From positions 186,001 through 250,000 of IMG/VR virus record IMGVR_UViG_3300042540_001399: a stretch of DNA of 64,000 nt, one strand, 5' to 3'. This document shows, piece after piece, positions 36,822-60,927 of this stretch. Under the pieces are notes generated by a model. That model did not search any database, was not told the origin of the DNA, and saw nothing but the letters and a program-made list of their open reading frames with translations. The stretch's first letter is position 1. Each line of letters begins with the position of its first letter. The position numbers were made by a program, and so were the translations under genes.

Positions 36822-36827
36822 CAAAAC

Positions 36828-36897: not shown

Positions 36898-36903
36898 CTA
36901 CAT

Positions 36904-36977: not shown

Positions 36978-36978
36978 C

Positions 36979-37075: not shown

Positions 37076-37077
37076 AT

Positions 37078-37149: not shown

Positions 37150-37150
37150 C

Positions 37151-37283: not shown

Positions 37284-37287
37284 ATTT

Positions 37288-37359
37288 ACCCCTTTCGTAT
37301 AATGGAAGTACAACACTCTTCTAAGGTGTCAGGTTGGAGTTCGAATCTCTGAGGGGGTA
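37288..37359 (+). tRNA. tRNA-Arg(TCT)
   Basis: ACCCCTT/AGGGGGT; ACACT-CTTCTAA-GGTGT. Confidence 0.9.
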
Positions 37360-37370
37360 CAACAAAATAC

Positions 37371-37441
37371 GCGTCTCTGGTGTAATGGTAGCATGATGGA
37401 TTCCAAACCCATCGGTCAGGGTTCGAGCCCTTGGGGACGCG
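37371..37441 (+). tRNA. tRNA-Trp(CCA)
   Basis: GCGTCTC/GGGACGC; ATGGA-TTCCAAA-CCCAT. Confidence 0.88.
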
Positions 37442-37449
37442 CTAATTAA

Positions 37450-37522
37450 GGACAGGTAGCTCAGTTGGTAGAGCGTTGGACTGAAGATCCAAGCGTCGGG
37501 GGTTCAATTCCCTCCCTGTCCA
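37450..37522 (+). tRNA. tRNA-Phe(GAA)
   Basis: GGACAGG/CCTGTCC; TTGGA-CTGAAGA-TCCAA. Confidence 0.95.
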
Positions 37523-37568
37523 CAAAATAAAATTTGTAATTTCTAACAAAAACCATTATCTTTGTATA

Positions 37569-38063
37569 ATGAAACATTTACCATACGAAGCTACAGGAAA
37601 GGCAATTAAGGGATATTCTGAATCAGAAACCGCTAGACGTGAAACAAATGACTGTGTGGTTAGAGCATTTGCATCGTCATTTGAAGTGTCTTATGATTAT
37701 GCCCATAAGTTTGTTGCGGATGAATTTGGTAGAAGACCAAGAAAAGGAACTTACGGAACTGTATCAAAACTTGTCAAAATGGCCGACAGTTTATTTAAAG
37801 TTAATGGTAAAAAAGTTTGTCCTGTTGGTATTAGACACAACGATAATATGTTAAGATCTTTGATGTATGATGTTAAAGTGAAAGGGGAAATTAAAAAAAG
37901 AAATATGACTGTTGGGACATTTGTTAAACAAAATCCAAAAGGAACTTTTTTTGTTTTGGTTAGACGACACGCATTTACAATCAAAGATGGTGTTGTAATT
38001 GGTAATTGGGATGACGCTATAAAAACAAAAAGACCAATGAGATGTGCCTTCAGAATTAAATAA
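37569..38063 (+). CDS. phage protein with NDCVVRA...HAF.I.DG motif (possible Cys-His-Asp peptidase fold)
   Basis: TATCTTTG -7 element at 37557-37564; Cys, His and Asp motif residues. Confidence 0.65.
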   Translation: MKHLPYEATGKAIKGYSESETARRETNDCVVRAFASSFEVSYDYAHKFVADEFGRRPRKGTYGTVSKLVKMADSLFKVNGKKVCPVGIRHNDNMLRSLMYDVKVKGEIKKRNMTVGTFVKQNPKGTFFVLVRRHAFTIKDGVVIGNWDDAIKTKRPMRCAFRIK

Positions 38064-38075
38064 AAAAATAAAAAA

Positions 38076-38531
38076 ATGAACCGTGTATTTAGAACGGTGG
38101 AAGGGGTTTCTATACCTGATATTGTAAAACATACTATTGATATTCTTAAAGAATGTCCATATGCTGAAATACACATTGGTACAGACTCACAAAACCATAG
38201 AAGATCAACCGTGTATGTTACGGCAATAGCATATAGATATGGTAACCGTGGGGTTCACTACATTTATCATAAACAAAAAATTAAAAAAATTCGTGATAAG
38301 TGGACAAGATTATGGAATGAAGCTGATTATTCGATCGAAGTTGCAAATTGGTTGACAAATAAAATAAAGGTTCAAGTTGAAATAGACCTTGATTACAATT
38401 ATCAAGAAAAGTACTTCAGTTCGAAGTTAGTTGGTCCAGCGGTTGGGTGGGTACAATCGTTAGGTTATAAGGCAAATATAAAACCAAATAATCAAATTGC
38501 AACAAGAGCGGCAGACCACCACTGTCGTTAA
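38076..38531 (+). CDS. RNase H-like YkuK family protein
   Basis: IGTDSQ, RLWNEA, DLDYN, IKP...AADH. Confidence 0.8.
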   Translation: MNRVFRTVEGVSIPDIVKHTIDILKECPYAEIHIGTDSQNHRRSTVYVTAIAYRYGNRGVHYIYHKQKIKKIRDKWTRLWNEADYSIEVANWLTNKIKVQVEIDLDYNYQEKYFSSKLVGPAVGWVQSLGYKANIKPNNQIATRAADHHCR

Positions 38532-38533
38532 TT

Positions 38534-38605
38534 GGTCGGGTGTCTGATGGGTAAAGTCTCGGTCTGCAAAACCGTAGTATGTGGGTTCGAATCCCACCCC
38601 GACCT
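38534..38605 (+). tRNA. tRNA-Cys(GCA)
   Basis: GGTCGGG/CCCGACC, U73; loop CTGCAAA. Confidence 0.9.
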
Positions 38606-38614
38606 CAACAAAAT

Positions 38615-38688
38615 GCCCCTATGGCGGAATTGGTATACGCGTGTGACTTAGGATCACAATCTTGCAGGTTCGAGTCCTGCTGGGGGTA
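38615..38688 (+). tRNA. tRNA-Leu(TAG), short variable loop
   Basis: GCCCCTA/TGGGGGT; TGTGA-CTTAGGA-TCACA; variable region ATCTT. Confidence 0.9.
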
Positions 38689-38727
38689 CAAATATTTTTA
38701 TTAGTATATTTATACTAAAAGATTATT

Positions 38728-39318
38728 ATGAAAAAGATTATAAGACTTACTGAATCAGATCTCGCTCGTATAGTTGGACGAGTTATTAAAGAAGAATATG
38801 ATGAAGATGATGAAGTGGAGGTTACACCTGAAATGATTATCAAAATGCTTATGGATAGTGCCGAATCAACCCCACAAGAAAATTATGATGACCTATATGA
38901 TTGGATGCAAGATGTATTTTCACCGGTTGAAAGTGAACTTGAGGATATGGGGTATGATATTGACGACCTTCGTATGACATATGATGATGTTATAATGAGT
39001 TTATGGGATGATAATGATGAAGATGATGAGGAATCATTATATGAATCAGATCTCGCTCGTATCGTTAAACAAGTTATTAGTGAATCTAAAAAGAATCTTA
39101 GTAAATCTGAAATATTGAAGATGTCAAAAGATGAGCTAAAAGATGTTTATGGTGAATTGGAAGTAAAAGGTGAGTATCACGGAAACAAAGGAACATTCCA
39201 CCACTTCAAAAGAACTGCAATCGGAGATATTGTCTGTAGTTTTAGAACTGATGACTCAACACCATCAGGATTGAAAAGAAATACTCAAGGAATTAAAGTC
39301 AAAAATTTAGATTTTTAA
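38728..39318 (+). CDS. protein with two LxESDL motifs
   Basis: MKKIIRLTESDLARIV and internal LYESDLARIV; ATATTTAT 38706-38713. Confidence 0.8.
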   Translation: MKKIIRLTESDLARIVGRVIKEEYDEDDEVEVTPEMIIKMLMDSAESTPQENYDDLYDWMQDVFSPVESELEDMGYDIDDLRMTYDDVIMSLWDDNDEDDEESLYESDLARIVKQVISESKKNLSKSEILKMSKDELKDVYGELEVKGEYHGNKGTFHHFKRTAIGDIVCSFRTDDSTPSGLKRNTQGIKVKNLDF

Positions 39319-39324
39319 TAAAAC

Positions 39325-39356
39325 TTGACACTTTTGAAATTATTAGTATATTTATA
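39325..39356 (+). promoter_or_regulatory. promoter upstream of leader 2
   Basis: TTGACA 39325-39330 and TATATTTATA 39347-39356. Confidence 0.6.
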
Positions 39357-39377
39357 AAACAAATTAAAAAACCGCAA

Positions 39378-39446
39378 ATGAAAAATTTACACATATTATT
39401 GATAGGGGGCGATTTAGCTGAAGCAACTTTCAAGAAGAGGGTGTAA
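39378..39446 (+). CDS. attenuator leader peptide 2 (22 aa)
   Basis: MKNLHILLIGGDLAEATFKKRV; codons match tRNA array 2. Confidence 0.85.
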   Translation: MKNLHILLIGGDLAEATFKKRV

Positions 39447-39469
39447 TATTTTATACATTTAATATTTAG

Positions 39470-39504
39470 AACCCCTCTTCCAAAAAAGAGGGGTTTTTTG
39501 TTTT
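39470..39504 (+). terminator. attenuator terminator 2
   Basis: AACCCCTCTT/AAGAGGGGTT plus T tract; boxA-like motif and tRNA-Leu follow. Confidence 0.9.
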
Positions 39505-39530
39505 AGGTTCTTTGAAATAATGGTAATAAT

Positions 39531-39615
39531 GGTTCGGTGGTGGAATTGGCAATACACGACAGGTTTAAGCCCTGTTTCCCATTGAGGATTGTGGGTTCGA
39601 GTCCCACCCGGACTA
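39531..39615 (+). tRNA. tRNA-Leu(TAA)
   Basis: GGTTCGG/CCGGACT; ACAGG-TTTAAGC-CCTGT; variable arm. Confidence 0.93.
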
Positions 39616-39620
39616 CAACA

Positions 39621-39716
39621 AAAACACATAAACTTTGGTTCCCACACAGCGGTGAGACGGGGTAAGTTATATACAATTTCTCGGGGCTGGAAGTAGAAAG
39701 CCAAAGAATGTGTTTT
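39621..39716 (+). ncRNA. candidate rod-like structured RNA C (6S-like?)
   Basis: AAAACACAT/ATGTGTTTT, CTTTGGTT/AGCCAAAG, CAGC/GCTG, GAGA/TCTC nested stems. Confidence 0.55.
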
Positions 39717-39777
39717 TTTAAAAAAAACTTTACAAAGTATTTGGTAGAACAAAATAAAAAATTTAATTTTGTAATAA

Positions 39778-39894
39778 ATGAAGACAATTGAAGTTACATA
39801 TCAAGAAATCAAAATGGCAACAAGGCCAAATGTGTATAAAAATAAAAAAAAATACACAAGAAAAGAAAAACATAAAAAAGATTTGGTAGATTAA
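39778..39894 (+). CDS. small basic protein, ArfA-like motif (38 aa)
   Basis: MKTIEVTYQEIKMATRPNVYKNKKKYTRKEKHKKDLVD; TAATTTTG at 39764-39771. Confidence 0.6.
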   Translation: MKTIEVTYQEIKMATRPNVYKNKKKYTRKEKHKKDLVD

Positions 39895-39905
39895 AAAAAA
39901 TCTTA

Positions 39906-39989
39906 TATCTTTGTTAAACAAATGACGGGGGTAGGAAAATTAGTGTTGTGGATTCCTACTCCCGTGTAAAAGGGAAGAAAGTTCTTTGA
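39906..39989 (+). promoter_or_regulatory. -7 promoter, 13-bp hairpin and boxA-like motif (rrn-leader-like)
   Basis: TATCTTTG 39906-39913; ACGGGGGTAGGAA/TTCCTACTCCCGT 39925-39965; GTTCTTTGA 39981-39989. Confidence 0.6.
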
Positions 39990-40000
39990 TTTAAAATATT

Positions 40001-40081
40001 GTGGTTGTAAGCAATGGGAAACTCGTTAAGTACATCAACCAGTTGGCTCAAGATGGTGAAACGAGAGTGTGAGTCAACTAC
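40001..40081 (+). ncRNA. candidate structured RNA D
   Basis: GTGGTTG/CAACTAC, CTCGTT/AACGAG, CATC/GATG nested stems. Confidence 0.45.
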
Positions 40082-40103
40082 TAAATCACAAAAAAAATGA
40101 AAT

Positions 40104-40228
40104 AGGCAAGTGGCGGAATTTATGGCAGACGCTTAGGTTGATTCCCCGTAAGAAGTCACCGAGATATAGCTGGGGATGTCTCTTGAAAAGGGAACTATAT
40201 CGTACAGGTTCGAATCCTGTTTTGCCTA
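40104..40228 (+). ncRNA. tRNA-like RNA with expanded anticodon/variable region and pseudoknot
   Basis: AGGCAAG/TTTGCCT acceptor, Leu-type D arm, ACAGG-TTCGAAT-CCTGT T arm, ~70-nt insert. Confidence 0.75.
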
Positions 40229-40233
40229 CACAT

Positions 40234-40306
40234 CGCGGGATGTGGAAGATGGTTATCCGCTCGGTCTCATAAGCCGAGATCGCCGGTTCGAGTCCGGCTC
40301 CCGCAA
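40234..40306 (+). tRNA. initiator tRNA-fMet(CAT)
   Basis: C1:A72 mismatch, CGCGGGA/TCCCGCA; loop CTCATAA. Confidence 0.9.
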
Positions 40307-40311
40307 CTTAA

Positions 40312-40371
40312 AGGGTGGATAGGTGGAAGGGCCTTTCCTGAAAGACGGTTTACTAGGCCCGTGTCCACCCT
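40312..40371 (+). ncRNA. candidate small structured RNA E
   Basis: AGGGTGGATA/TGTCCACCCT and GGGCCT/AGGCCC stems. Confidence 0.45.
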
Positions 40372-40382
40372 ACTGAATTTAT

Positions 40383-40463
40383 GCTGACGTACCAGTGGAT
40401 GCTTATATCATCTATACCTGTAGCGGTAAGTTGAAAACGTTGGTTCGAATCCAACCGTCAGTA
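40383..40463 (+). tRNA. D-armless tRNA-like RNA with TAT anticodon-like loop
   Basis: GCTGACG/CGTCAGT; GGATG-CTTATAT-CATCT; GTTGG-TTCGAAT-CCAAC; 7-nt D replacement. Confidence 0.6.
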
Positions 40464-40466
40464 CGG

Positions 40467-40610
40467 GAGTGTATGCAGTAGAGATCTGCTTATGATGGTA
40501 GGGACAAACACTTTAAAAAAGGGTCCCAAAGAGATAAGCCGTTTAGTAGTTTTGGTCGATAAAAACTAACGGATTTTATAGTAATGGTTCACCGATCGAA
40601 ACCAATACTC
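40467..40610 (+). ncRNA. candidate multibranched RNA F
   Basis: GAGTGT/ATACTC closing stem with four internal hairpins. Confidence 0.5.
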
Positions 40611-40681
40611 ATGATGTCAGAAAGGTTGATCACCTAATTCATGTAAACACCGTGACAACACCCCAAAGTTGTCACACTTTT

Positions 40682-40757
40682 GCGGGAGTAGCTCAATTGG
40701 TAGAGTTCCAGCCTTCCAAGCTGGCTGTTGAGGGTTCGAATCCCTTCTCCCGCTCCA
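40682..40757 (+). tRNA. tRNA-Gly(TCC)
   Basis: GCGGGAG/CTCCCGC-T-CCA; loop CTTCCAA. Confidence 0.95.
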
Positions 40758-40761
40758 AGTT

Positions 40762-40834
40762 GGGCCTGATGCCGACGGCAGGTCGAGTGGTTTGCAACCA
40801 CATCGTTTGGGTTCGATTCCCACAGTGTCCACCA
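40762..40834 (+). tRNA. atypical tRNA-Ala(TGC)
   Basis: G3:U70, A73, encoded CCA; GTGG-TTTGCAA-CCAC; bulged acceptor stem. Confidence 0.75.
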
Positions 40835-41007
40835 AATAAACAAAAAAACAAAGTAGTGATGAAGGAAGTTTTGTCAGGAACTTTAAAATCAAGAAAAGTT
40901 AATTTTGTTCAGATTGAAAATAACAGTGATTTTTTAAGTTCTTTAAGAAAAAAAATAAAAAAAAGAATAAGTAATTTAAAAAAAACAATTAAATTTGTAA
41001 AAAAAAG

Positions 41008-41087
41008 AAGATGAGTTTCCCTACATCCCGGATTAGTGAGAAACTTAAAGAGGGACAAAAGTGGTACACAAGTCCACGACTCATCTT
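41008..41087 (+). ncRNA. candidate structured RNA G
   Basis: AAGATGAGT/ACTCATCTT closing stem, two hairpins; TAAATTTG at 40990-40997. Confidence 0.45.
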
Positions 41088-41092
41088 AATTT

Positions 41093-41164
41093 GGTCGGTT
41101 CATCTAGGGGTCAGGATACAAGGTTTTCATCCTTGTCACACGGGTTCGAATCCCGTACCGACTA
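41093..41164 (+). tRNA. tRNA-Glu(TTC)
   Basis: GGTCGGT/ACCGACT; CAAGG-TTTTCAT-CCTTG. Confidence 0.93.
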
Positions 41165-41189
41165 CAAACCTGTCAAGGTAGTACAGGAA

Positions 41190-41305
41190 GGTCAGGAGTG
41201 TAATGAGGCACGGTGCCAAGTCCTAAAGACACCACGGTCCAAGAGCAATTTGGACGCGAGAAGTTATAAGGTTGCTCATTGTAGGTTCGAATCCTACCCT
41301 GACTT
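41190..41305 (+). ncRNA. tRNA-like RNA: acceptor plus T arm with novel 84-nt body
   Basis: GGTCAGG/CCTGACT; GTAGG-TTCGAAT-CCTAC; AATGAG/CTCATT and GTCCAA/TTGGAC stems. Confidence 0.7.
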
Positions 41306-41307
41306 CA

Positions 41308-41455
41308 CGGTTCGGATCATCACCGAATAGTATGCCCAATACGATGAGAAATGAGGTGATACCTCATATGGGACTTCTGATAGATAAAGGATCTATTCGG
41401 TTTGACTAACCGCGGGAAATATCAAAGAGGGTTGAAGAACTACGTACCCTCGAGT
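41308..41455 (+). ncRNA. candidate multi-hairpin RNA H
   Basis: CCGAATAG/CTATTCGG, ATGAGG/CCTCAT, CGGTT/AACCG, GAGGG/CCCTC. Confidence 0.4.
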
Positions 41456-41461
41456 CCAATT

Positions 41462-41536
41462 GGTCCATTGGTGTAGTGGCTAACATTCATCCCTGTCACG
41501 GATGAGCCGCGAGTTCGATTCTCGCATGGACCGCCA
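41462..41536 (+). tRNA. tRNA-Asp(GTC)
   Basis: GGTCCAT/ATGGACC-G-CCA; CATCC-CTGTCAC-GGATG. Confidence 0.95.
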
Positions 41537-41558
41537 AACTTATTAAAAATTAACCATT

Positions 41559-41828
41559 ATGAAAACTTTTCAAGACTTGGAATTTATAAAAATAAATGAT
41601 GCACCGTTTATGGTTGGTAAAAAATCCCGTATGCATTTTGATAATGGGTTCGGTGTATCTGTTGTATCACACTCTTATTCATATGGGGGTCGTGATGGTC
41701 TTTATGAAGTCGCGGTCCTTGACTCTGACGACAATCTTACCTACGATACTCCAATAACCAATGATGTAATGGGTTACTTAACTGAACAAGATGTTACTAA
41801 TGTCATGAAACAAGTTCAAGAGCTATAA
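41559..41828 (+). CDS. hypothetical phage protein
   Basis: 89 aa; FDNGFGVSVV...GGRDGLYEVAVL. Confidence 0.75.
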   Translation: MKTFQDLEFIKINDAPFMVGKKSRMHFDNGFGVSVVSHSYSYGGRDGLYEVAVLDSDDNLTYDTPITNDVMGYLTEQDVTNVMKQVQEL

Positions 41829-41913
41829 AAGATGACAGTTTTTTTATTCATAACATTTTTAACGACACTTTTTTTGTTGAGAAAAAAAAGAAAGTTTTAA
41901 GTAGATAAAAAAA

Positions 41914-41987
41914 GGTCTCTTAGCTCATTAGGTTAGAGCAACTGACTCATAATCAGTAGGTGGTTGGTTCGATCCCAACAGGGACCA
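41914..41987 (+). tRNA. tRNA(CAT), Ile2 (lysidine)-type
   Basis: GGTCTCT/AGGGACC; GACTCATAATC anticodon arm as in bacterial tRNA-Ile2 (recalled, not searched). Confidence 0.8.
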
Positions 41988-42032
41988 CAAAAGTATTGAA
42001 TATTTTAAAACAGAAATTATTATTTATAATAT

Positions 42033-42106
42033 GCACCCGTAGCTCAGCTGGATAGAGCAACTGCCTTCTAAGCAGTAGGTCAATGGTTCGAATCCATTCG
42101 GGTGTA
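42033..42106 (+). tRNA. tRNA-Arg(TCT), second copy
   Basis: GCACCCG/CGGGTGT; ACTGC-CTTCTAA-GCAGT. Confidence 0.95.
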
Positions 42107-42178
42107 CTTTTTTTTTATTTTTTTTTTGGAAATCAAAAAGTTTCCTGTATCTTTGTTGAAATAAATAACGATAAAGAT

Positions 42179-51156: not shown

Positions 51157-51645
51157 ATGAATATTTTTTTTCTTGACTACGATACCCAAAAATGTGCACA
51201 ATATCATTGCGATAAACATGTGGTCAAGATGGTATTAGAAACTGCACAACTTTTATGTGGGGTTCATCATACAACCCCCCAAGTTACCCCCCAAGTTCCC
51301 TACAAGTTATCCCACAAAAATCACCCATGCGCAATATGGACTCGTGAAAGTTTATCAAACTACTTATATCTTTGTGATCTTGGTTTAGAATTATGTAATG
51401 AATATAGTTTTAGATATGGTAAAACACATAAGTCACAACAAGTAATCGAGTGGTGTCTTGATAATAAACCAAACATAGTTGATAAAGGTTTTACCACACC
51501 ACCAAAAGCAATGCCCGATGAATATAAAGTTTTTGACGTTATTGAATCTTATAGAAACTACTATCGTGGGGCAAAAAAAAGTTTTGCTTCATGGAAAAAT
51601 AGACAAATACCCGATTGGTTTCAAACTGATGAAGTATTTATATGA
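51157..51645 (+). CDS. pyrimidine-dimer DNA glycosylase (endonuclease V-like)
   Basis: MNIFFLD, HCDKHVVKM.LE.AQLL, H.NHPC..W. Confidence 0.8.
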   Translation: MNIFFLDYDTQKCAQYHCDKHVVKMVLETAQLLCGVHHTTPQVTPQVPYKLSHKNHPCAIWTRESLSNYLYLCDLGLELCNEYSFRYGKTHKSQQVIEWCLDNKPNIVDKGFTTPPKAMPDEYKVFDVIESYRNYYRGAKKSFASWKNRQIPDWFQTDEVFI

Positions 51646-53183
51646 TAAAATCATATATGAAAGGTTTATTAAATGAACATTTGACTAGAATAAGATCATT
51701 GATGTCTATCAATGAATCTTTAGTTGATGCATACCCAAAATTTTCGAAAAAAATATTTGATGAAGTAGACCCTACTTGGGGTGGTGGGCCAAATTCGCAT
51801 TCATCAAGACACCCTGATGCATCCGGCAAAGATTGGTTTAGTAATAACGCATACGACATCATGGCACCTGAAGGGACACCAATATATTCAATATCGGAAG
51901 GTTATGTTGATAAAATTACCGACAATCCACCAGGTTTAAGATCAGTTGGTGGTAAGAGAATTTATGGGGACAGTTTAACCATTAGAGGAACAGGGGGTGA
52001 TCCCGATGTTTTCTACACACATGTAACAAAAATTGTTGTTGAAGAGGGACAATACGTTGATAGGGGTCAATTATTAGCATTCATAATCAAAGGGGAGTTG
52101 GGTATACCTGAACACGTTCATGTTGCAGTAAAAGTTGGTGATGTGAAAGATTTCTTAGATGTTGATGGAAACATAAACAGAGTCAATATTGATTTAGTGG
52201 ATAGACTAAAAATCTTACCAACAAACAAGGAACTTGAAGTGACAACCGACCCAAAAACAATAATGGGCGCTGCGGCCGGTCTTACCGCATCAGCTATAAG
52301 TTCTTTAAATATTAATAGACCTGAGTCTGACATCAGTGGCATTGCAACAAGATTCGGTATTAAAGATACTGATGTTAACATGGATTCGGTATCAGGTGTT
52401 TTGAATAAAATAATATTATCTTCTGAAGGTCTTGGTACTGATGAAACTGGAATTCATGATGCAATAAAGAAATTAAAAAGTTGTTATGAACTTGATGAAA
52501 TTAACAAAATTGTAGAAAGAAAAGAAATCGACGGAAAAAAATACAAAGACATTTATGATTATATAAATAGTGAAATGAATTATGGTGATGAGCTGTTTGT
52601 AAAAAGTTTAGTAAAAACCATAAATAATATATGTCCTGATACCGTAACTGATAAAGGTACTCAAATAGTGAAAGTAACAAGATCATCATCTTTAGGATCT
52701 GGAATCGATAGAGTCAGTCCTATAAAATTATTAAATGATCTAAAATCATATGGATTATCTGATAAGGCCGCCAAAGGTGTTGTTGCGAATGCTTTTGGTG
52801 AAAGTGGGTTTAACGTTAAGGCTAAAGGAGATTCTGGACCCAACGCCGAAAACAACACAAGATCAATAAATATAGATGGTAAAAAATACTGTTCGTTTGG
52901 ATTGTGGCAATATAATGTCTGTGGTGGTATGGGGGTTTCTTATTTGAAGAACTATAATATAGATGTTGACAGATCAACAGACGCTGAAAAAATCAGGGTT
53001 CTATTTGATTATAATAAACAAATTGAATTTATGTCTAAAAGAATTAAAGAAGAACAATCCAAAAGCGAAAAAGATGTTAGAACATGGATTGATTGGATTG
53101 TTGATAATGTAGAAAGACCATCAGATAGATACGGTGCAAAAATGAAAAGACAAGAATTTGCAAAACAACAAGGTTGGTCTTAA
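51642..53183 (+). CDS. multidomain wall hydrolase: M23-like, annexin-like repeat, phage tail lysozyme
   Basis: AYDIMAPEGTP..FYTH..HVH; GLGTDETGI; GVVANAFGESG..FGLWQY. Confidence 0.75.
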   Translation: MIKSYMKGLLNEHLTRIRSLMSINESLVDAYPKFSKKIFDEVDPTWGGGPNSHSSRHPDASGKDWFSNNAYDIMAPEGTPIYSISEGYVDKITDNPPGLRSVGGKRIYGDSLTIRGTGGDPDVFYTHVTKIVVEEGQYVDRGQLLAFIIKGELGIPEHVHVAVKVGDVKDFLDVDGNINRVNIDLVDRLKILPTNKELEVTTDPKTIMGAAAGLTASAISSLNINRPESDISGIATRFGIKDTDVNMDSVSGVLNKIILSSEGLGTDETGIHDAIKKLKSCYELDEINKIVERKEIDGKKYKDIYDYINSEMNYGDELFVKSLVKTINNICPDTVTDKGTQIVKVTRSSSLGSGIDRVSPIKLLNDLKSYGLSDKAAKGVVANAFGESGFNVKAKGDSGPNAENNTRSINIDGKKYCSFGLWQYNVCGGMGVSYLKNYNIDVDRSTDAEKIRVLFDYNKQIEFMSKRIKEEQSKSEKDVRTWIDWIVDNVERPSDRYGAKMKRQEFAKQQGWS

Positions 53184-53479: not shown

Positions 53480-54376
53480 ATAGATTATCCGTTCAGGAAA
53501 AGTTTTGTCAGATTCTATGACAAGTAATTGGAATGAAATTTCCATCTTTGAATGATAAAGATATTGGGCCGTGTATAGTCCATAAAATAAACTACGAAAG
53601 TAGGATAAAGTGAACCCTTAAGTGTGTTGGGTTTGCGGCTTCTTCGGGAGCTTGAGTACACAAGCGGGATACCATTTTGGCTTTAGTATTGAGGGCAACG
53701 CTGTAAAGAATAAGGCAAAATGATTTGGCGATGTGGGTCGTCTGATTGAGGTGGGAACACCAATAGGAATAACCCGTAGGAATATTGCAAGACTCAAAGT
53801 CATCCAACTTTAATATTGCGTTTTCCAATATAATAGGTTACTTAAAACCAAGTGGAAGGACCACAAGGTAAGATGTAGAACGAGTGGTGTCGCTAACATC
53901 CTTCACTCAGGTTTACCAAAACCCGGTGATGAAGTAGTCTAAAAATATGGAGGTAGGGATATCTCACGGAGTAGTTGAGTATCGACTCGTTCAAAAGATG
54001 GGTTGGCTCGGTTGGCGGACCACTACTTCGACAATCCACGACACAAAACTTATGACTATTGAATTAAGTCCATTAATTAATACATTAAGGAAAAGTGTCC
54101 GTCAGGTTTGGATGAAAGGTGACTACATAGTAATGAGCCGTTCATTGCACACAGAGATCCCAAGTCGATGTGTAATTATCCGAAAAACCTTTAGTCCCGC
54201 AAGGACGAGTTGGGAAGGCATTCTCGAAAAGAGTAGATTAGGATGAGAGTAATTCAAACCTTAAGGAGTGGTAAACCTAAAAGACCGTCACTGAGAAATA
54301 CTTCTCAAAAGGAAGTGGATAAGAGTAGAAACAATAATGACTCTAAAGGTTCTCACACAAACGTGTAATCTCAGCG
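53480..54376 (+). ncRNA. large ornate ncRNA, GOLLD-like
   Basis: ~0.9 kb, visibly GC-richer than flanks, many GNRA/UUCG-type hairpins, CTGAGA/TCTCAG terminal stem, own promoter and terminator. Confidence 0.7.
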
Positions 54377-54410
54377 TTTTATTTTAATGGAGCCACCGGT
54401 AAAGAACATT

Positions 54411-55816: not shown

Positions 55817-55938
55817 GGGTTTTTATTTTTTAGTTATTAAATTATTAATAATACAAATATATGTGGTTTTTTTTAATTTACAAACACAAAATTTGTTTTT
55901 TTTCTTTTTTCCCCATCAAATATGATGGGGATTTCAGA

Positions 55939-56329
55939 TGGTGGAGGCGGAGGGACTCGAACCCTCGTCCATAATATCCTGTCAGATAAGGACTACATGT
56001 TTAGGTTGATATTTTCTAATATCCCAAAATAGTTGATTTGTTCTTCACCATCGTAAATCAACAACCAATGGTCCCGAATCGGATTTAGAGAGCCATCCGG
56101 TGTGCTCTATCAAACTACGACTTCTGTTGCTAGGTTATATGTCTGCCGACCCCCCGTTTCCGTAAACTTCTTAAGCTACAGTAACTTCAGAACCTCTTAC
56201 TAATCCAAGAGTTTCCATTTTGTTTAGCACATTGCCAGTTGTTTTCTAAGTCAGTTTTTAAAGAGATTAACTCAGTCCCTACATGCCCTTATTCTTCAGC
56301 CAATACCTGTCAAATCCAAAAACGCCCCC
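55939..56329 (-). ncRNA. ssrA: tmRNA
   Basis: 5' GGGGGCG...GGATTTGACAGG; 3' GGACGAGGGTTCGAGTCCCTCCGCCTCCACCA; G3:U70; tag ORF 56236-56171. Confidence 0.95.
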
Positions 56330-56359: not shown

Positions 56360-56421
56360 TATAAGTACAAATATAAGTACTATTTTAATTATATCCAAAT
56401 TTGGGTATATTTATTTTTAAG

Positions 56422-57501
56422 ATGTCTGAACACAGTGAAATATACGATTTTTTGAAAAAAGTTTCCAAAGGTGACACATCATTTATGCCATATAGTAGAT
56501 GGAATTTACCTTACCCAATTTATGATATAAAGTATAACAGCCAATCACCAGCGTCAAGTGTTATTTGGATTGAATTTGAAAATACCGAAAAATATTTAAA
56601 TGCCTTAGGGATCGATGATGATGAAGATATATTTGTTTGGAATAGATTTATGGAAAATTACTATTATGACGATTATGATTACTACCGTTATGAAGAAGAT
56701 TGGAAAGAAGGTTATATTATAAAAGATTTCAATCCTGAAAACATCCGATTAGTTGAAAATATACTTATGTTATCTAATCCTTCATTAAGTCTAGATATTA
56801 ATAATGATGAAAGTTGTTCTAATGTTTCCTTGTATTTGTCAAGAAGATTTGATGATATTGATTACATTATTAGTGAATTTGGTAATCTAAATGAAGATTG
56901 TAAACGAAGAGCGGTAGTTGACGTTTTAGATAATGAAACTAAAAATCCATTTCGTAAATTTGGTATCACTGAAATTTATAAAAGACACAGATTCAAAACT
57001 ACTGTTAATGTGTTATTACATTGGTATAACGTAATTGACAATAAAGAATTAGACCTAATTGAATTATTACAAGAACTACTGAAAAAATTTGATAATGAAA
57101 GTAGAGGTAATTGGTATGAGTTAGAATATAATGTTTGGTGTGATGATTTTGACAATGAATCGTTTCAAAAGGAAACAAAAAGAAACTTAGAAAAAATTAT
57201 AGAAAATTTGGAAGAAAGTATTGAAGGAAAGGTTGATCTTGAAACAATAAATTCCTTATATAATAAAGTCATAAGTTTGGGTGGGTTTGGTAGATGGATT
57301 AATATTAAAGAAAAGAAAGCTGAAGTTAACTTTAGAGATTTGGATACTAAAAAAGGGATACTAAAATTTTACTATAGAAGCCCACAAACCGGAAAGGCAA
57401 CTGAAGAAAGGTCTGTCAAAAATTTGGAAGAACTCAACTTATCACTTTATCAACCTGAGCTTTTTGAGCATGTAAAAAAAATCAAGAAAATTATATTGTA
57501 A
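56422..57501 (+). CDS. acidic hypothetical protein
   Basis: ATG 56422 after ATATTTAT. Confidence 0.75.
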   Translation: MSEHSEIYDFLKKVSKGDTSFMPYSRWNLPYPIYDIKYNSQSPASSVIWIEFENTEKYLNALGIDDDEDIFVWNRFMENYYYDDYDYYRYEEDWKEGYIIKDFNPENIRLVENILMLSNPSLSLDINNDESCSNVSLYLSRRFDDIDYIISEFGNLNEDCKRRAVVDVLDNETKNPFRKFGITEIYKRHRFKTTVNVLLHWYNVIDNKELDLIELLQELLKKFDNESRGNWYELEYNVWCDDFDNESFQKETKRNLEKIIENLEESIEGKVDLETINSLYNKVISLGGFGRWINIKEKKAEVNFRDLDTKKGILKFYYRSPQTGKATEERSVKNLEELNLSLYQPELFEHVKKIKKIIL

Positions 57502-57530: not shown

Positions 57531-58316
57531 ATGGAAAGAAATTATAATTTACTCAAAGAAGTTTTGTCGGTGCCGTCTAAGACTTATCAAGAAGATTTGT
57601 TAATACAATTTATTTGTGATTGGTTGGACCAAAACAATTTTGATTACTTTGTTGATGATTTATATAATATTTATGTAACTAAACAAACTGATGAATCTGT
57701 TGAGTTTTTTCCTTGTGTAGTTGCACACACAGATACTGTACACAACATAGATAAAATAAATGTAAAAGAAGAAATGTTACCTGACGCCCAAGGTAATGTA
57801 AAACTTTCTTTAAAAGCTTATAATGACGAAGGTAATCCTACAGGTATTGGTGGTGATGATAAGTGTGGTGTTTATGCTTGTTTAGAATTATTGAAAGAAA
57901 TACCCAATTTAAAAGCTGCTTTTTTTGTGGCTGAAGAAACGGGATGTAAAGGGTCTTTCAATGCGGATCCAAATTTCTTTTCAAATGTTGGTTATGTAAT
58001 TCAATTTGATGCTCCCGAAAACAACATGATTTCAGAATTCCTTATGAACAGACCAATGTTTGATAGAAATAGTGAATTTTTTAATGTTGGTGGTAAATTA
58101 ATTACTGAACATTTTCCAAGTGACACAAAATATCACAAACATCCTTACACGGACATTTATCCTTTGAACCAAAAATTTGGTATGTCATGTTTTAATGTTT
58201 CCATAGGTTACTACAATTACCACACAAAAAACGAATATGTTGTCGTAGATGACACCTATAATGGAATCAAGGTTGGTAAGTTAATGATTGAAGAATTAGG
58301 TTGTACTAAACATTAA
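57531..58316 (+). CDS. M28/M20 family metallopeptidase
   Basis: AHTDTV, GGDDKCG, AEETGC, QFD, GYYNYH. Confidence 0.88.
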   Translation: MERNYNLLKEVLSVPSKTYQEDLLIQFICDWLDQNNFDYFVDDLYNIYVTKQTDESVEFFPCVVAHTDTVHNIDKINVKEEMLPDAQGNVKLSLKAYNDEGNPTGIGGDDKCGVYACLELLKEIPNLKAAFFVAEETGCKGSFNADPNFFSNVGYVIQFDAPENNMISEFLMNRPMFDRNSEFFNVGGKLITEHFPSDTKYHKHPYTDIYPLNQKFGMSCFNVSIGYYNYHTKNEYVVVDDTYNGIKVGKLMIEELGCTKH

Positions 58317-58344
58317 AAAAGGAGGACTTTTAATCCTCCTTTTT
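58316..58344. terminator. bidirectional terminator
   Basis: AAAAAGGAGGA/TCCTCCTTTTT. Confidence 0.85.
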
Positions 58345-60390
58345 CTTTCTACCTTTTTTCTTGGGTTCAGGTTTAGATCTATCTTCTATACTTATTGTTT
58401 GTGTTTCTCCTTCTCCCTCAACAAATAACATATAATCAGTTCCTTCGACAACTTCGTTTGTTAGAATTTTTTCAGAAATAAGATCTTCTATTTTATCTTG
58501 TATTGCTCTTTTTATTGGTCTTGCACCATATTGGTCATCAAACCCAACTTTTGATATGAAATCAATGACAGAATTTTCATATGAAACTTTGTATTTCATA
58601 GATGATAATCTAGAAATGAGTTTATCAATTTCTAATTTAACAATTTTATCTATGTGATCTTTTTTAAGTGAATTAAAAATAATAACGTCATCAATTCTAT
58701 TTAAAAATTCAGGTGCAAAAAACTTACTTAATTCTTTTTTAAGAATGTCTCTTTTATATTCTTCTTGGATTGCATCACTATTATTATTTGTTTTAAAACC
58801 AACACCACTACCAAAATCCTGTAATTTCTTTACCCCAATATTTGATGTCATAATTATTAGGCAATTTTTGAAATTTATTTTTCTGCCTAATCCGTCAGTT
58901 AAATGGCCATCATCCAACAATTGAAGTAATGTGGAAAAAACATCTTTATTTGCCTTTTCAATTTCATCAAACAAAATTACAGAATAAGGTTTGTTCTTTA
59001 CTTGCTCTGTTAATTGACCCCCTTCTTCATGACCAACGTATCCTGGTGGTGATCCTATCAAACGTGAAATGGTATGTTTTTCTTGAAACTCACTCATATC
59101 TACCCTAATTAAACTATCTTCACTACCAAATATTTCTTTTGCCAATTGTTTTGCTAAAAAAGTTTTACCAACACCTGTTGATCCTAAAAATATAAAAGAA
59201 CCAATTGGTCTATTTGGATCTTTTATACCTACCCTATTTCTTCTTATAGATTTAGAAATTTTACCTACAGCTTCTTCCTGTCCAATTACATTTTTATTTA
59301 ATGTTGTTTCAAGATTGACTAAAGAATTTTTTTCATCAATGTTTATTTTACTAACAGGAATTTTAGTCATGTTGGACACAACTTCGTAAATTAGTTCTTC
59401 AGGTATACCCCTTTTACTATTTTTAAGGTCTTCTTCAAATTTCTTTTTTTCTTCTTCAAGTTTTAAGAGAATACTTCTTTCACGATCCCTAAGTTCTGCC
59501 GCTTGTTCATAATTTTGTTTTTTTATGACATTAAGTTTTTCTTGTTTAATTTCTTGGGCTTCTATTTTCAATTTTTCAATTGACTCGGGTAGTTTAATAT
59601 CTATTTGCATTCGTGACCCAACCTCATCTAAAATATCAAAAGCTTTATCTGGAAATTCCCGATCGGTAATATATCTATCCGCTAGCTCAACACATAACCA
59701 AAGTGAATCATCAGTGTAATTAACTTTGTGATGTTCTTCATACTTCGATTTACTTTGTTTCAGAATTTCAAAAGTTTCTTCTTTTGTTGATGGATCTACA
59801 ATAATTTTTTGAAACCGTCTTTCTAAAGCCCCATCTTTTTCGAAATGTTTTCTATACTCATCTAAAGTGGTTGCTCCAATACACTGTATTTCACCTCTTG
59901 AAAGTGCTGGTTTAAATATGTTTGATGCATCCAAAGAACCCGAGCTATTACCGGCACCAACCATAGTGTGAATTTCGTCGATAAAAAGAATAATGTTAGG
60001 CGTGTTTTGAAGTTCTTCTATTATAACTTTCATTCTTTCTTCAAACTGACCTCTATATTTTGTTCCAGCAACAATAGAATTTATATCTAAGGAAACTATC
60101 CTTTTATCTACTAAATTTTTTGGACAATCGCCACTATAAATCATCATTGCCAAACCTTCTGCAATTGCCGTTTTACCTGCACCTGGTTCTCCAATAATAA
60201 TAGGATTATTTTTCTTTCTTCTTGAAAGAACTTGAGCAATCCTAAAAATTTCTTTTTCTCTACCAATTACTGGATCTAATTTACCTTGTTCGGCAAGTTT
60301 AATTAAATCTTTACTAAAATTGTCTAAAACAGGCGTTCCACCATCTGTCTTTTTTTTGTTTTTTTCATTATCATCTACAAAATCTAACAT
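58330..60390 (-). CDS. clpC: ClpC-like AAA+ ATPase lacking the N-terminal Clp-repeat domain
   Basis: GEPGAGKT, FIDEIH, UVR-like NYEQAAELRDRE, GSTGVGKT, FDEIEK, VGF ClpP-docking loop. Confidence 0.88.
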   Translation of the reverse strand: MLDFVDDNEKNKKKTDGGTPVLDNFSKDLIKLAEQGKLDPVIGREKEIFRIAQVLSRRKKNNPIIIGEPGAGKTAIAEGLAMMIYSGDCPKNLVDKRIVSLDINSIVAGTKYRGQFEERMKVIIEELQNTPNIILFIDEIHTMVGAGNSSGSLDASNIFKPALSRGEIQCIGATTLDEYRKHFEKDGALERRFQKIIVDPSTKEETFEILKQSKSKYEEHHKVNYTDDSLWLCVELADRYITDREFPDKAFDILDEVGSRMQIDIKLPESIEKLKIEAQEIKQEKLNVIKKQNYEQAAELRDRERSILLKLEEEKKKFEEDLKNSKRGIPEELIYEVVSNMTKIPVSKINIDEKNSLVNLETTLNKNVIGQEEAVGKISKSIRRNRVGIKDPNRPIGSFIFLGSTGVGKTFLAKQLAKEIFGSEDSLIRVDMSEFQEKHTISRLIGSPPGYVGHEEGGQLTEQVKNKPYSVILFDEIEKANKDVFSTLLQLLDDGHLTDGLGRKINFKNCLIIMTSNIGVKKLQDFGSGVGFKTNNNSDAIQEEYKRDILKKELSKFFAPEFLNRIDDVIIFNSLKKDHIDKIVKLEIDKLISRLSSMKYKVSYENSVIDFISKVGFDDQYGARPIKRAIQDKIEDLISEKILTNEVVEGTDYMLFVEGEGETQTISIEDRSKPEPKKKGRKKKED

Positions 60391-60549: not shown

Positions 60550-60927
60550 ATGTTTAATTGGAATAAATTTGACAAACTTTTTAATGAAATGTTTAATTCT
60601 TCTTTTGATGGGTTTTCTTTTGATGAAAATAAATGGCAAAAAAGAACCTATAAATCACCAGATGGAAGTATTTCTATGACTTACTTCACTCATTCACCTA
60701 AAGTAAGTAATCAATCTAATGAAATAGAATTACTTAAACAAAAACTTGATTTGGCGGTTGAAGAACAAAACTTTGAAGATGCCGTAAAATTACGTGATGA
60801 AATTAAAAATTTGGAAATTAATCAAGAAAAAATTTCAGAACTAAAAAATAAATTAGATGAATGTGTAAAAAATCAAGATTTTGAAAGTGCTATAGAATAT
60901 AGGGATCAAATAAAAAGCTTGAAATAA
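60550..60927 (+). CDS. tandem UVR (UvrB/C) domain protein
   Basis: AVEEQNFEDAVKLRDEIK and CVKNQDFESAIEYRDQIK. Confidence 0.85.
   Translation: MFNWNKFDKLFNEMFNSSFDGFSFDENKWQKRTYKSPDGSISMTYFTHSPKVSNQSNEIELLKQKLDLAVEEQNFEDAVKLRDEIKNLEINQEKISELKNKLDECVKNQDFESAIEYRDQIKSLK

What the first reader, a model, noticed from the sequence alone, without database searches (positions are those of the whole stretch)
56171..56236. Phage tmRNA encodes a long non-canonical tag ending VTVA
Seen: after ACAACT the resume codon GGC gives (A)GNVLNKMETLGLVRGSEVTVA, 21 residues. Established: Bacteroidota tags are short, also resume at Gly and end YALAA; ClpX reads a C-terminal Ala-Ala. Inference: the tag may escape host ClpXP or redirect rescued proteins to the phage Clp ATPase 2 kb away.
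Basis: partly seen in the sequence, partly recalled or inferred. Interest (0 to 1): 0.65.

Follow-up and report, generated by a model that had tools for sequence, protein, structure and literature searches.

The report
Phage tmRNA with long conserved tag
A 291-kb lake-water phage carries its own working ribosome-rescue RNA (tmRNA), which adds a 21-residue tail unlike any sampled bacterial tag; the gene always sits next to a phage Clp unfoldase and a peptidase, which suggests, but does not prove, a phage-run protein-disposal route.

Summary
A full-length one-piece tmRNA lies on the minus strand at 55939-56329 (Rfam 114 bits). The tag frame at 56236-56171 reads GNVLNKMETLGLVRGSEVTVA plus TAA.

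The frame is proven by comparison. Among 204 related phage tmRNAs (137 unique, bodies down to 42% identity) there are 50 tag peptides of 21-22 residues. They fit G-[ND]-V-[LI]-x-K-[ML]-x3-G-L-[ILV]-R-x4-5-V-A, with many synonymous changes and all three stop codons at one site. The frame-setting A at -4 is invariant.

RNA-library contigs from four studies lie on the tmRNA. ARAGORN misses 93 of 97 family members.

59 sampled Bacteroidota tags are 8-10 residues and end [LM]AA. A degenerate scan of 185,579 species genomes found no bacterial tag of this type.

The Clp ATPase 2 kb away is a ClpC that lacks its N-domain but keeps the ClpP-docking VGF loop. It and an M20 peptidase accompany the tmRNA in every locus that can be tested. 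The phage has no ClpP or SmpB.

Redirection to the phage ClpC is plausible but untested. Escape from host ClpXP has no support here. I rate this a new variant of a known kind.

The parts
55939..56329 (-). One-piece tmRNA (ssrA) gene; the mature RNA is predicted to run from 56329 (5' G) to 55939 (3' CCA).
   Evidence: Rfam RF00023 at 114.3 bits, E 6e-44, full model. RNAalifold on 36 diverse relatives gives 40 pairs, 32 of them with compensatory changes, in helix 2, the PK1 stem, the T arm and a 3' hairpin. Exact contigs from RNA libraries lie at 55947-56207, 55978-56200 and 56205-56310.
56171..56236 (-). Tag reading frame: resume codon GGC at 56236-56234, 21 codons, stop TAA at 56173-56171. Encodes GNVLNKMETLGLVRGSEVTVA, added after the Ala carried by the tmRNA.
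   Evidence: Relatives give 50 distinct peptides of 21-22 aa. Synonymous changes are frequent. pN/pS is 0.47 in this frame against 0.80 and 1.28 in the other two, and only this frame is free of stops. ARAGORN gives the same frame for 3 of the 4 relatives it calls.
56237..56241 (-). Frame-setting element upstream of the resume codon: C(-5) A(-4) A C U(-1). The A at 56240 is the equivalent of E. coli A86.
   Evidence: A at -4 in 137/137 family members, and a pyrimidine at -5 and at -1. In E. coli, A86 is the main determinant of frame choice (PMC2481249). An in-frame TAG at 56248-56246 closes the frame 4 codons upstream.
55939..55949 (-). 3' acceptor strand CGCCUCC (55949-55943, with U70 at 55945), discriminator A and CCA (55942-55939). 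It pairs with GGGGGCG at 56329-56323.
   Evidence: Read from the sequence. G3:U70 is found in all 91 relatives that my parser resolved, and discriminator A in 90 of those 91. The rest, inspected by eye, show the same pair with a variant T loop.
56368..56397 (-). Candidate promoter: TGGATA-16-TATATT, overlapping a TAnnTTTG motif at 56375-56368, 46 nt upstream of the mature 5' end. Weak.
   Evidence: Consensus scan only. TAnnTTTG is not enriched before genes in this genome.
58330..60390 (-). ClpC-like double AAA+ unfoldase (686 aa) with no N-terminal domain. It has a short UVR-type middle domain and the ClpP-docking loop GSGVGFK at residues 527-533.
   Evidence: Pfam AAA, AAA_lid_9, UVR, AAA_2 and ClpB_D2-small, with no Clp_N. 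It aligns to S. aureus ClpC residues 153-798, E 2e-220. G[VMI]GF is kept in 175/175 relatives. It is always upstream of the tmRNA on the same strand, 1.7-5.2 kb away.
57531..58316 (+). M20-family metallopeptidase, catalytic domain only (261 aa), lying between the ClpC-like gene and the tmRNA.
   Evidence: Pfam Peptidase_M20, E 3e-5, just under its cut-off. PHROG 4191 'peptidase', E 4e-35. Motifs AHTDTV, GGDDKCG and EETG align with the PepD metal site in 2qyv. It sits between ClpC-like and tmRNA in 139/139 loci holding both.
56401..57501 (+). ORF of unknown function (366 aa) next to the tmRNA. It is poorly conserved.
   Evidence: No Pfam, NCBIfam or PHROG hit. A homologue with median 33% identity lies between ClpC-like and tmRNA in 92/139 loci.
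60550..60927 (+). 125-aa protein with two UVR motifs, transcribed divergently from the ClpC-like gene. It is a possible partner of the ClpC middle domain, but that is speculative.
   Evidence: Pfam UVR, E 8e-21, two stretches. It resembles the C-terminal UVR part of McsA (NCBIfam, E 7e-11, far below the cut-off). Found in 59/139 loci, a count limited by the flank available.

Best explanation
This is a working phage-encoded tmRNA.

Shown or directly supported:
- It has the alanine identity pair G3:U70, a T arm, helix 2 and pseudoknot stems that are kept by compensatory changes, and the invariant frame-setting A at -4.
- It is present in RNA libraries from natural waters.
- Its message is under selection at the peptide level.

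Follows from established knowledge: because the phage has no SmpB, the RNA must work with host SmpB, AlaRS, EF-Tu and ribosomes. On stalled ribosomes it would add Ala plus GNVLNKMETLGLVRGSEVTVA.

Inferred:
- The tail is a two-part degradation signal. The C-terminal aliphatic-Ala carboxyl end (V-A in 44 of 50 variants) would be the part threaded by a ClpP-coupled AAA+ unfoldase.
- The invariant N-terminal module (G1, K6, G11, R14; GNV[LI]xK[ML]xxxGL[ILV]R) would be a specificity or adaptor site with no counterpart in host tags.
The prime candidate is the N-domain-less ClpC, which would dock on host ClpP through its conserved VGF loop. The neighbouring M20 exopeptidase could then finish the peptides.
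- The likely benefit is ribosome recycling and amino-acid salvage in cells whose mRNA is being destroyed.

My sub-probabilities:
- Functional tmRNA read in this frame: 0.95.
- The tag is a degron: 0.65.
For: Identity and structure.

Translation of the frame.
- 50 peptides from 74 distinct tag nucleotide sequences.
- Arg14 encoded by CGT/AGA/CGC.
- All three stop codons at one site.
- pN/pS of 0.47 against 0.80 and 1.28 in the other frames.
- No stops in this frame only.

RNA presence: exact contigs from four metatranscriptome studies lie on 55947-56310.

The tag is unlike bacterial tags:
- 59 Bacteroidota tags are 8-10 aa and end [LM]AA.
- Of the 93 matching stretches the degenerate scan returned from 185,579 species genomes, none is a tmRNA tag.

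Linkage:
- ClpC-like is upstream on the same strand in 99/99 tag-found loci that contain it, and in no locus with at least 6.5 kb of upstream sequence is it missing.
- The M20 peptidase lies between them in 139/139 loci.
- G[VMI]GF is kept in 175/175 relatives.
- The ClpC-like protein is homologous to ClpC but has no N-domain.

What the phage lacks: ClpP, SmpB, Lon, S41 and ClpS.

The N-terminal 14 residues are more conserved than the C-terminal 7.
Against: - No experiment or structure here links the tag to any protease.
- All carriers belong to one phage lineage (ClpC-like at least 74% identical among the 80 best loci fetched), so constant gene order may only reflect descent.
- The tmRNA and the ClpC-like gene are separated by genes on the opposite strand, so they are not one operon.
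- A more distant phage with a 58%-identical ClpC-like gene has no tmRNA.
- The tag residues do not score as an amphipathic helix, so no binding mode is suggested.
- An aliphatic-Ala end could be read by host ClpXP, Lon or FtsH as well.
- The RNA evidence is contigs only. It gives no strand and no ends, and DNA carry-over cannot be excluded.
- The host is unidentified.
Confidence: 0.45

Rival explanations
1. The tag is an ordinary degron read by host machinery (ClpXP, host full-length ClpCP, Lon or FtsH). The phage tmRNA only raises ribosome-rescue capacity during infection, and its position near the ClpC-like gene is inherited gene order with no functional coupling.
For: - The tag ends in an aliphatic residue plus Ala with a free carboxylate, like known tags.
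- The phage has no ClpP and no SmpB, so it depends on host factors anyway.
- All 101 sampled Bacteroidota genomes have their own ClpC.
- The genes between the tmRNA and the ClpC-like gene are on the other strand.
- All carriers are one lineage.
Against: - If host readers were enough, a host-like short YALAA tag would do. Instead, 14 N-terminal residues with no host counterpart stay nearly invariant while the tmRNA body falls to 42% identity.
- No such tag was found in bacterial genomes.
Confidence: 0.3
2. The tag is not a degradation signal. It protects rescued chains from host ClpXP (the 'escape' reading), or it marks or sequesters them for another purpose. Alternatively only ribosome release matters and the peptide is conserved for reasons tied to translation of the tmRNA itself.
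For: - The C-terminus is V-A rather than the L-A-A that ClpX reads in E. coli. That ClpX reads L-A-A is from my own knowledge of ssrA recognition and was not tested here.
- Only 2 of 50 variants end in AA.
- In E. coli the tag sequence is not needed for phage growth that depends on tmRNA (PMC2481249).
Against: - Strong peptide-level conservation with synonymous changes argues that the peptide itself has a function.
- The last two residues are still the most degron-like part, and Ala is terminal in 49 of 50 variants.
- The conserved neighbours are an unfoldase with a ClpP-docking loop and an exopeptidase.
Confidence: 0.12
3. The frame or the resume codon is wrong, or the gene is a decaying copy captured from a host and no longer makes a tag.
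For: - ARAGORN does not call the gene.
- The middle of the Rfam alignment is poor.
Against: - The frame is open in 74/74 tag variants, whereas the other two frames carry stops in 60/60 and 54/60 of the 60 distinct 21-codon tags tested.
- Synonymous codon swaps are frequent, and TAA, TAG and TGA all occur at the same stop site.
- A at -4 is invariant.
- Compensatory changes occur in 32 of 40 pairs.
- ARAGORN gives the same frame where it does call a relative.
- RNA-library contigs lie on the gene.
Confidence: 0.03

Closest known systems
Bacterial one-piece tmRNA (SsrA, Rfam RF00023), for example E. coli with tag ANDENYALAA
   Same: - tRNA-like domain with G3:U70 and ACCA, helix 2 and pseudoknots.
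- Frame-setting pyrimidine-A at -5/-4 before the resume codon.
- A short internal ORF that ends in a hydrophobic residue plus Ala.
   Different: - It is encoded by a phage that has no SmpB.
- The tag is 21-22 residues rather than about 10.
- It ends V-A rather than L-A-A.
- The most conserved part of the tag is the N-terminal 14 residues, not the C-terminus.
- ARAGORN misses it.
Bacteroidota tmRNAs (likely host phylum), with tags such as GENNYALAA, GNTQYAMAA and ANDYSYAMAA
   Same: A Gly resume codon occurs in part of the phylum. The RNA has a similar length (350-405 nt) and a similar Rfam score range.
   Different: - All 59 sampled tags are 8-10 residues and end [LM]AA.
- Apart from the tRNA-like end there is no sequence similarity to the phage RNA.
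- No bacterial genome matched the tag motif.
Known phage tmRNAs: mycobacteriophages of the Bxz1 group, Bacillus phage G (PMC4131195), and two-piece tmRNAs of marine myophages such as Melnitz (PMC9004378)
   Same: These are phage-borne ssrA genes in large genomes rich in tRNA genes. Proposed roles are keeping translation going or tagging proteins for recycling.
   Different: - This is a different lineage: lake-water jumbo phages with 31% GC.
- It is one-piece.
- It has its own conserved tag family.
- It is constantly linked to an N-domain-less ClpC and an M20 peptidase.
- I did not compare tag sequences with those phages.
Long natural tags, for example cyanobacterial ANNIVPFARKAATVAA (seen here in locus L389)
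   Same: The tags are longer than 15 residues, have Asn at position 2, a basic residue in the middle and an aliphatic run before the terminal Ala.
   Different: The cyanobacterial tag ends VAA, resumes at Ala and is 16 residues long. The resemblance is loose and I did not test for homology.
ClpC of Firmicutes (S. aureus 6em9, B. subtilis 3j3s)
   Same: The phage protein aligns end to end with ClpC residues 153-798 (E 2e-220; the printed alignment is more than half identical). It has two AAA+ rings, a short UVR-type middle domain and the ClpP-docking loop.
   Different: The N-terminal domain of about 150 residues is missing. In Firmicutes that domain binds MecA and phospho-arginine substrates (my own knowledge). 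No adaptor is known for the phage protein.

Membership tests
tmRNA (SsrA, RF00023) | Scores above the curated threshold of the family covariance model over its full length. | tested here: met
   114.3 bits against a gathering score of 47, model positions 1-374, E 6e-44.
tmRNA (SsrA, RF00023) | tRNA-like domain: 7-bp acceptor stem with G3:U70, T arm, discriminator A and CCA end. | tested here: met
   GGGGGCG/CGCCUCC followed by ACCA in the window. G3:U70 is found in 91/91 relatives that could be parsed. The T arm shows compensatory changes.
tmRNA (SsrA, RF00023) | Long-range helix 2 and the pseudoknot 1 stem are kept in evolution. | tested here: met
   RNAalifold on 36 sequences gives 32 of 40 pairs with changes on both sides. 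The later pseudoknots were not modelled.
tmRNA (SsrA, RF00023) | The resume codon is preceded by the frame-setting A (E. coli A86) at -4. | tested here: met
   A at -4 in 137/137, and a pyrimidine at -5 and at -1. The role of A86 is from PMC2481249.
tmRNA (SsrA, RF00023) | An internal short ORF that is translated and under peptide-level selection. | tested here: met
   synonymous swaps, three different stop codons at one site, and pN/pS lowest in this frame. Translation itself was not observed.
tmRNA (SsrA, RF00023) | Works with SmpB. | not testable with these tools
   No SmpB gene is found in the phage. A host SmpB would be needed, and the host is unknown.
Canonical ssrA degron (ClpX-read, C-terminal L-A-A type) | The tag ends in [LM]-A-A, as in E. 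coli and the sampled Bacteroidota. | tested here: not met
   The window tag ends T-V-A. Among 50 variants, 44 end VA and 2 end AA, and LA, TA, IA and VS occur once each. All 59 sampled Bacteroidota tags end [LM]AA.
Canonical ssrA degron (ClpX-read, C-terminal L-A-A type) | Tagged proteins are degraded by ClpXP. | not testable with these tools
   This needs a biochemical or in vivo degradation assay.
ClpC-type Hsp100 unfoldase | Two AAA+ modules with a short coiled-coil (UVR-type) middle domain. | tested here: met
   Pfam AAA, AAA_lid_9, UVR, AAA_2 and ClpB_D2-small. A single continuous alignment to ClpC 153-798, whereas ClpB aligns in two pieces around its longer middle domain.
ClpC-type Hsp100 unfoldase | N-terminal Clp_N double repeat domain. 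| tested here: not met
   There is no Clp_N hit. The protein starts at the equivalent of ClpC residue 153. Bacterial homologues are 830-920 aa against 686 aa here.
ClpC-type Hsp100 unfoldase | ClpP-docking loop tripeptide ([IVLM]-G-[FL]) in the second AAA+ module. | tested here: met
   GSGVGFK at residues 527-533, aligned with the loop of S. aureus ClpC. G[VMI]GF is kept in 175/175 relatives. Docking itself was not tested.
M20 metallopeptidase | The His, Asp and Glu-Glu metal and catalytic motifs. | tested here: inconclusive
   AHTDTV, GGDDKCG and EETG align with PepD 2qyv. The Pfam score of 24.4 is just below the cut-off of 24.6. The lid domain and the last metal ligands were not checked.

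The most novel reading that the evidence does not exclude
The tag is a degron private to the phage. Its invariant N-terminal module would be read, directly or through a small phage adaptor, by the phage's N-domain-less ClpC, which would borrow host ClpP. Every chain rescued from a stalled ribosome in the infected cell would then be pulled out of the host's quality-control routes and into a phage-run unfoldase-peptidase line (ClpC, then host ClpP, then the M20 exopeptidase) that returns amino acids to virion synthesis. That would make the tmRNA, unfoldase and peptidase a three-part viral proteolysis module.
Probability: 0.25. Interest if true: 0.8.

Novelty: new variant of a known kind. Interest (0 to 1): 0.55.

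Why it matters
Phage tmRNAs are known, but their tags have hardly been studied, and most surveys find them with ARAGORN. ARAGORN misses about 96% of this family.

This is a large, environmentally common group: more than 200 contigs, and lake, river and aquaculture metagenomes from many studies. In it the tag, not the RNA body, is the most conserved part, and it differs in length and sequence from every sampled bacterial tag.

That gives a clean, testable case for a long-open question: why does a virus bring its own trans-translation RNA? The candidate answers are extra rescue capacity or control over the fate of rescued proteins.

If the tag pairs with the phage ClpC, it would be a new orthogonal degron-unfoldase pair. 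It would also be an example of a virus taking over the end-point of host protein quality control.

Tried and rejected
1. ARAGORN on the window finds no tmRNA. This is a shortcoming of the tool for this family: it of 97 phage tmRNAs against 59 of 60 bacterial ones.
2. blastn of the tmRNA against the isolate-phage collection gives no match.
3. I looked for a bacterial donor of the tag. The degenerate pattern scan of species genomes returned 93 matching stretches; none of the 93 is a tmRNA tag: each lies inside a longer open frame or is cut short by an early stop. nhmmer with the phage tmRNA profile against 60 bacterial tmRNAs matches only the generic tRNA-like end, so no donor and no host can be read from the RNA.
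4. The Bacteroidota -7 promoter motif TAnnTTTG is not enriched before genes, so it is not usable as host evidence.
5. Identity of the ClpC-like protein to Bacteroidota ClpC is 52-58%. Its printed alignment to Firmicutes ClpC is conserved to a similar degree by eye (no identity figure was reported), so this carries no host signal.
6. Amphipathic-helix idea for tag residues 2-15: the hydrophobic moment is not above shuffles. Dropped.
7. I searched the phage's six-frame translation for other copies of the tag motif. Only the tmRNA has it.
8. I looked for a tmRNA in the distant huge phage LR745206, which has the best ClpC-like match. None was found.
10. Complex prediction was not used. The tag is shorter than the 30 residues asked for, and a degron binds in the pore of a hexamer that exceeds the size limit.
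11. The large protein searches, structure prediction and other genetic codes were not needed and not used.

Full report
**What is there.** The window is bases 186001-250000 of a 290,887-bp virus record that CheckV rates 99% complete. Rfam finds a full-length tmRNA on the minus strand at 56329-55939: RF00023, 114.3 bits against a gathering score of 47, E 6e-44. ARAGORN does not call it.

Read on the minus strand, the RNA starts GGGGGCG and ends CGCCUCC-ACCA. This gives a 7-bp acceptor stem with the alanine identity pair G3:U70, a discriminator A and an encoded CCA.

After ...AGAAAACAACU comes GGC at 56236, then 20 more sense codons, then UAA at 56173-56171. The Rfam consensus resume codon aligns with this GGC.

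**Is the frame real?** I collected relatives in three ways:
- An exact 26-nt seed from the start of the tag hit 74 viral contigs.
- The neighbouring ClpC-like protein found more than 556 viral loci, of which the best 80 were fetched.

A profile search of these loci gave 204 full-length tmRNAs, 137 of them unique. Their bodies fall to 42% identity with the window's copy. All of them nevertheless carry an open frame of 21 codons (42 peptide variants) or 22 codons (8 variants) at the same place:
- There are 74 distinct tag nucleotide sequences and 50 distinct peptides.
- They fit G-[ND]-V-[LI]-x-K-[ML]-x-x-x-G-L-[ILV]-R, then 4-5 variable and mostly acidic or small residues, then V-A.
- G1, K6, G11 and R14 never change.
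- Arg14 is written CGT (43), AGA (27) or CGC (4). Gly11 is GGT, GGA or GGG. Leu12 is TTA or CTT.
- The stop is TAA (70), TAG (3) or TGA (1), always at the same site.

Pairwise pN/pS is 0.47 in this frame, against 0.80 and 1.28 in the other two. Among the 60 distinct 21-codon tags tested, the other frames hold stops in 60 and in 54, and this frame holds none.

Upstream of the Gly codon the codon-like pattern stops. There, one position is invariant: A at -4 in 137/137, with a pyrimidine at -5 and at -1. This is the layout of E. coli U85-A86-G87-U88-C89 before G90, where A86 is the main determinant of frame choice (PMC2481249). In the window an in-frame UAG lies four codons upstream.

ARAGORN of the 97 unique relatives on which it was run. 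For three of these it gives this same frame.

I regard the resume codon, frame and tag as settled short of mass spectrometry.

**Is the RNA functional and expressed?** RNAalifold on 36 diverse members predicts 40 pairs (helix 2, the pseudoknot 1 stem, the T arm and a 3' hairpin). Of these, 32 show compensatory double changes. G3:U70 is kept in all 91 sequences that my parser resolved. The unresolved ones that I inspected by eye have a variant T loop but the same pair.

Near-complete DNA copies of the 5.2-kb stretch occur in lake-water, aquatic, freshwater and aquaculture metagenomes from many studies.

In four metatranscriptome runs from four studies, contigs lie on the tmRNA. Exact pieces cover 55947-56207, 55978-56200 and 56205-56310, and pieces from variant relatives cover the tag region. 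A few short exact pieces also lie on flanking genes. These are contigs, so they give no strand and no ends. Depth is a poor measure, and DNA carry-over cannot be excluded. Still, the RNA of this phage and its kin is present in RNA libraries from natural waters.

**How unusual is the tag?** I sampled the GTDB phylum Bacteroidota. Of 101 genomes, 97 had a tmRNA. I fetched 55 of these together with five from other phyla. ARAGORN called 59 of the 60.

All the Bacteroidota tags are 8-10 residues and end [LM]AA: GENNYALAA, GNTQYAMAA, GESNYAMAA, ANYNYALAA, ANDYSYAMAA, ADDYSYAMAA and a group read as DNNYSYRLAA.

A degenerate scan for the tag motif in one genome from each of 185,579 species returned 93 matching stretches. 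None is a tmRNA tag: each lies inside a longer open frame or is cut short by an early stop.

No paper in the library holds any of four tag strings. Phage tmRNAs as such are known. Examples are mycobacteriophages of the Bxz1 group and Bacillus phage G (PMC4131195), about 2% of isolate phages including two-piece forms (PMC9004378), and huge phages (PMC7162821). The huge-phage survey used ARAGORN, and the isolate-phage survey used it at least to class tmRNAs as one- or two-piece; ARAGORN would miss 93 of 97 members of this family.

What stands out is the pattern of conservation. In bacteria the C-terminal YALAA is the constant part of the tag. Here the first 14 residues are the constant part, and the end is only held to aliphatic-Ala: VA in 44 of 50 variants, AA in 2, and LA, TA, IA and VS once each.

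**Host.** The host was not identified. Evidence that leans towards Bacteroidota:
- The genome has 31% GC.
- Only 2.8% of 285 crude ORFs have a Shine-Dalgarno-like 4-mer upstream, and the leaders are A-rich from -14 to -10.
- With the same crude measure, Bacteroidota loci give 11%, loci of other phyla 42%, and related phage loci 4%.
- The Gly resume codon and the best isolate-collection matches of the ClpC-like gene to huge uncultured phages are weaker hints.

The promoter motif TAnnTTTG is not enriched. The tmRNA body shows no close bacterial relative.

**The neighbourhood.** The ORF at 60390-58330 (minus strand, 686 aa) aligns in one piece with S. aureus ClpC residues 153-798 (E 2e-220) and with B. 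subtilis ClpC. It has both AAA+ modules, a short UVR-type middle domain and the D2-small domain, but no Clp_N domain. Bacterial homologues are 830-920 aa.

It keeps GSGVGFK at the position of the ClpP-docking loop. G[VMI]GF is kept in all 175 family members, which argues that it works with a ClpP.

The phage itself has no ClpP, SmpB, Lon, S41 protease or ClpS. Any peptidase partner and SmpB must therefore come from the host.

Linkage to the tmRNA:
- Among 159 loci found through the tag alone, 99 contain the ClpC-like gene. It is always upstream of the tmRNA on the same strand, 1.7-5.2 kb away with a median of 2.4 kb. No locus with at least 6.5 kb of upstream sequence lacks it.
- Of the loci found through the ClpC-like gene, the 12 without a tmRNA all end 2.5 kb or less downstream.
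- Between the two genes lies an M20-family peptidase (57531-58316, plus strand) in 139 of 139 loci. Its AHTDTV, GGDDKCG and EETG motifs align with the PepD metal site.
- The genes on the far side of the tmRNA are not conserved, being found in only 3 of 139 loci.

The intervening genes are on the opposite strand, so this is a conserved neighbourhood and not an operon.

**Interpretation.** Shown: this is a functional-looking, RNA-library-supported phage tmRNA whose 21-residue message is under peptide-level selection and belongs to a tag family not seen in bacteria.

It follows from established knowledge that the RNA is charged with Ala and needs host SmpB.

Inferred: the tail is a degradation signal with two parts. 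One is an aliphatic-Ala end to be engaged by an AAA+ unfoldase. The other is an invariant N-terminal module that gives specificity.

Two points favour a reader that the phage brings along. First, a host-like YALAA would be enough if host ClpXP were the target. Second, the module stays fixed while the RNA body and the phages diverge. The N-domain-less ClpC (docking on host ClpP), with the M20 exopeptidase downstream, is the obvious candidate.

I put this at about 0.3. The ordinary-degron rival, read by host proteases with the linkage explained by descent, also gets about 0.3. A non-degron or 'escape' role gets about 0.1. Nothing here tests binding or degradation.

**Verdict.** This is a new variant of a known kind: a phage tmRNA with a new, conserved, long tag family and a constant unfoldase-peptidase neighbourhood. 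It is of moderate-to-good interest and directly testable.

Noticed in passing
window 53967-54377 (+): A full-length GOLLD RNA (RF02032, 320 bits, E 8e-91) lies 1.6 kb from the tmRNA. Together with the tRNA array, it puts three kinds of structured RNA gene within 20 kb of each other in this phage.
   Followed up: no
window 35915-42107 (+): An array of 22 tRNA genes, all on one strand. It includes two Met, three Arg and two Leu. No tRNA-Ala or tRNA-Ser was called, although the tag uses Ala and Ser codons.
   Followed up: no
L276:7035-7258 (-); also L074 and L017: In three relatives the tmRNA gene is interrupted in its T loop by a group I intron of about 225 nt (RF00028, 90.2 bits, E 1.5e-23 in L276). 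The 3' exon (T-stem strand, acceptor strand, ACCA) follows it. The window's copy has no intron.
   Followed up: partly
whole family (97 unique tmRNAs from L008-L159): ARAGORN detects only 4 of 97 of these phage tmRNAs but 59 of 60 bacterial ones. Surveys of phage tmRNAs that rely on it will have missed this family.
   Followed up: yes
window 57531-58316 (+): A short M20-family peptidase (261 aa, catalytic domain only, metal-site motifs present) always sits between the ClpC-like gene and the tmRNA, in 139/139 loci.
   Followed up: partly
window 60550-60927 (+): A 125-aa protein made of little more than two UVR motifs, like the C-terminal part of McsA. It is transcribed divergently from the ClpC-like gene. 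It could touch the UVR-type middle domain of the unfoldase.
   Followed up: no
whole genome G000 (290,887 bp): Genes almost never have a Shine-Dalgarno-like motif (2.8% of 285 crude ORFs) and have A-rich leaders peaking at -11 to -13. This is the initiation style of Bacteroidota. GC is 31%.
   Followed up: partly
window 51642-53183 (+) and 51157-51645 (+): A 513-aa protein combines an M23 peptidase domain with a phage tail lysozyme domain, so it is likely a tail-associated lysin. It follows a pyrimidine-dimer DNA glycosylase homologue.
   Followed up: no
window 55900-55938 (-), just 3' of the tmRNA: A perfect 8-bp hairpin (CCCCAUCA-UAUU-UGAUGGGG) follows the CCA end. It is followed by an A-run, not a U-run, so the scan does not count it as an intrinsic terminator. 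Its role is unknown.
   Followed up: no
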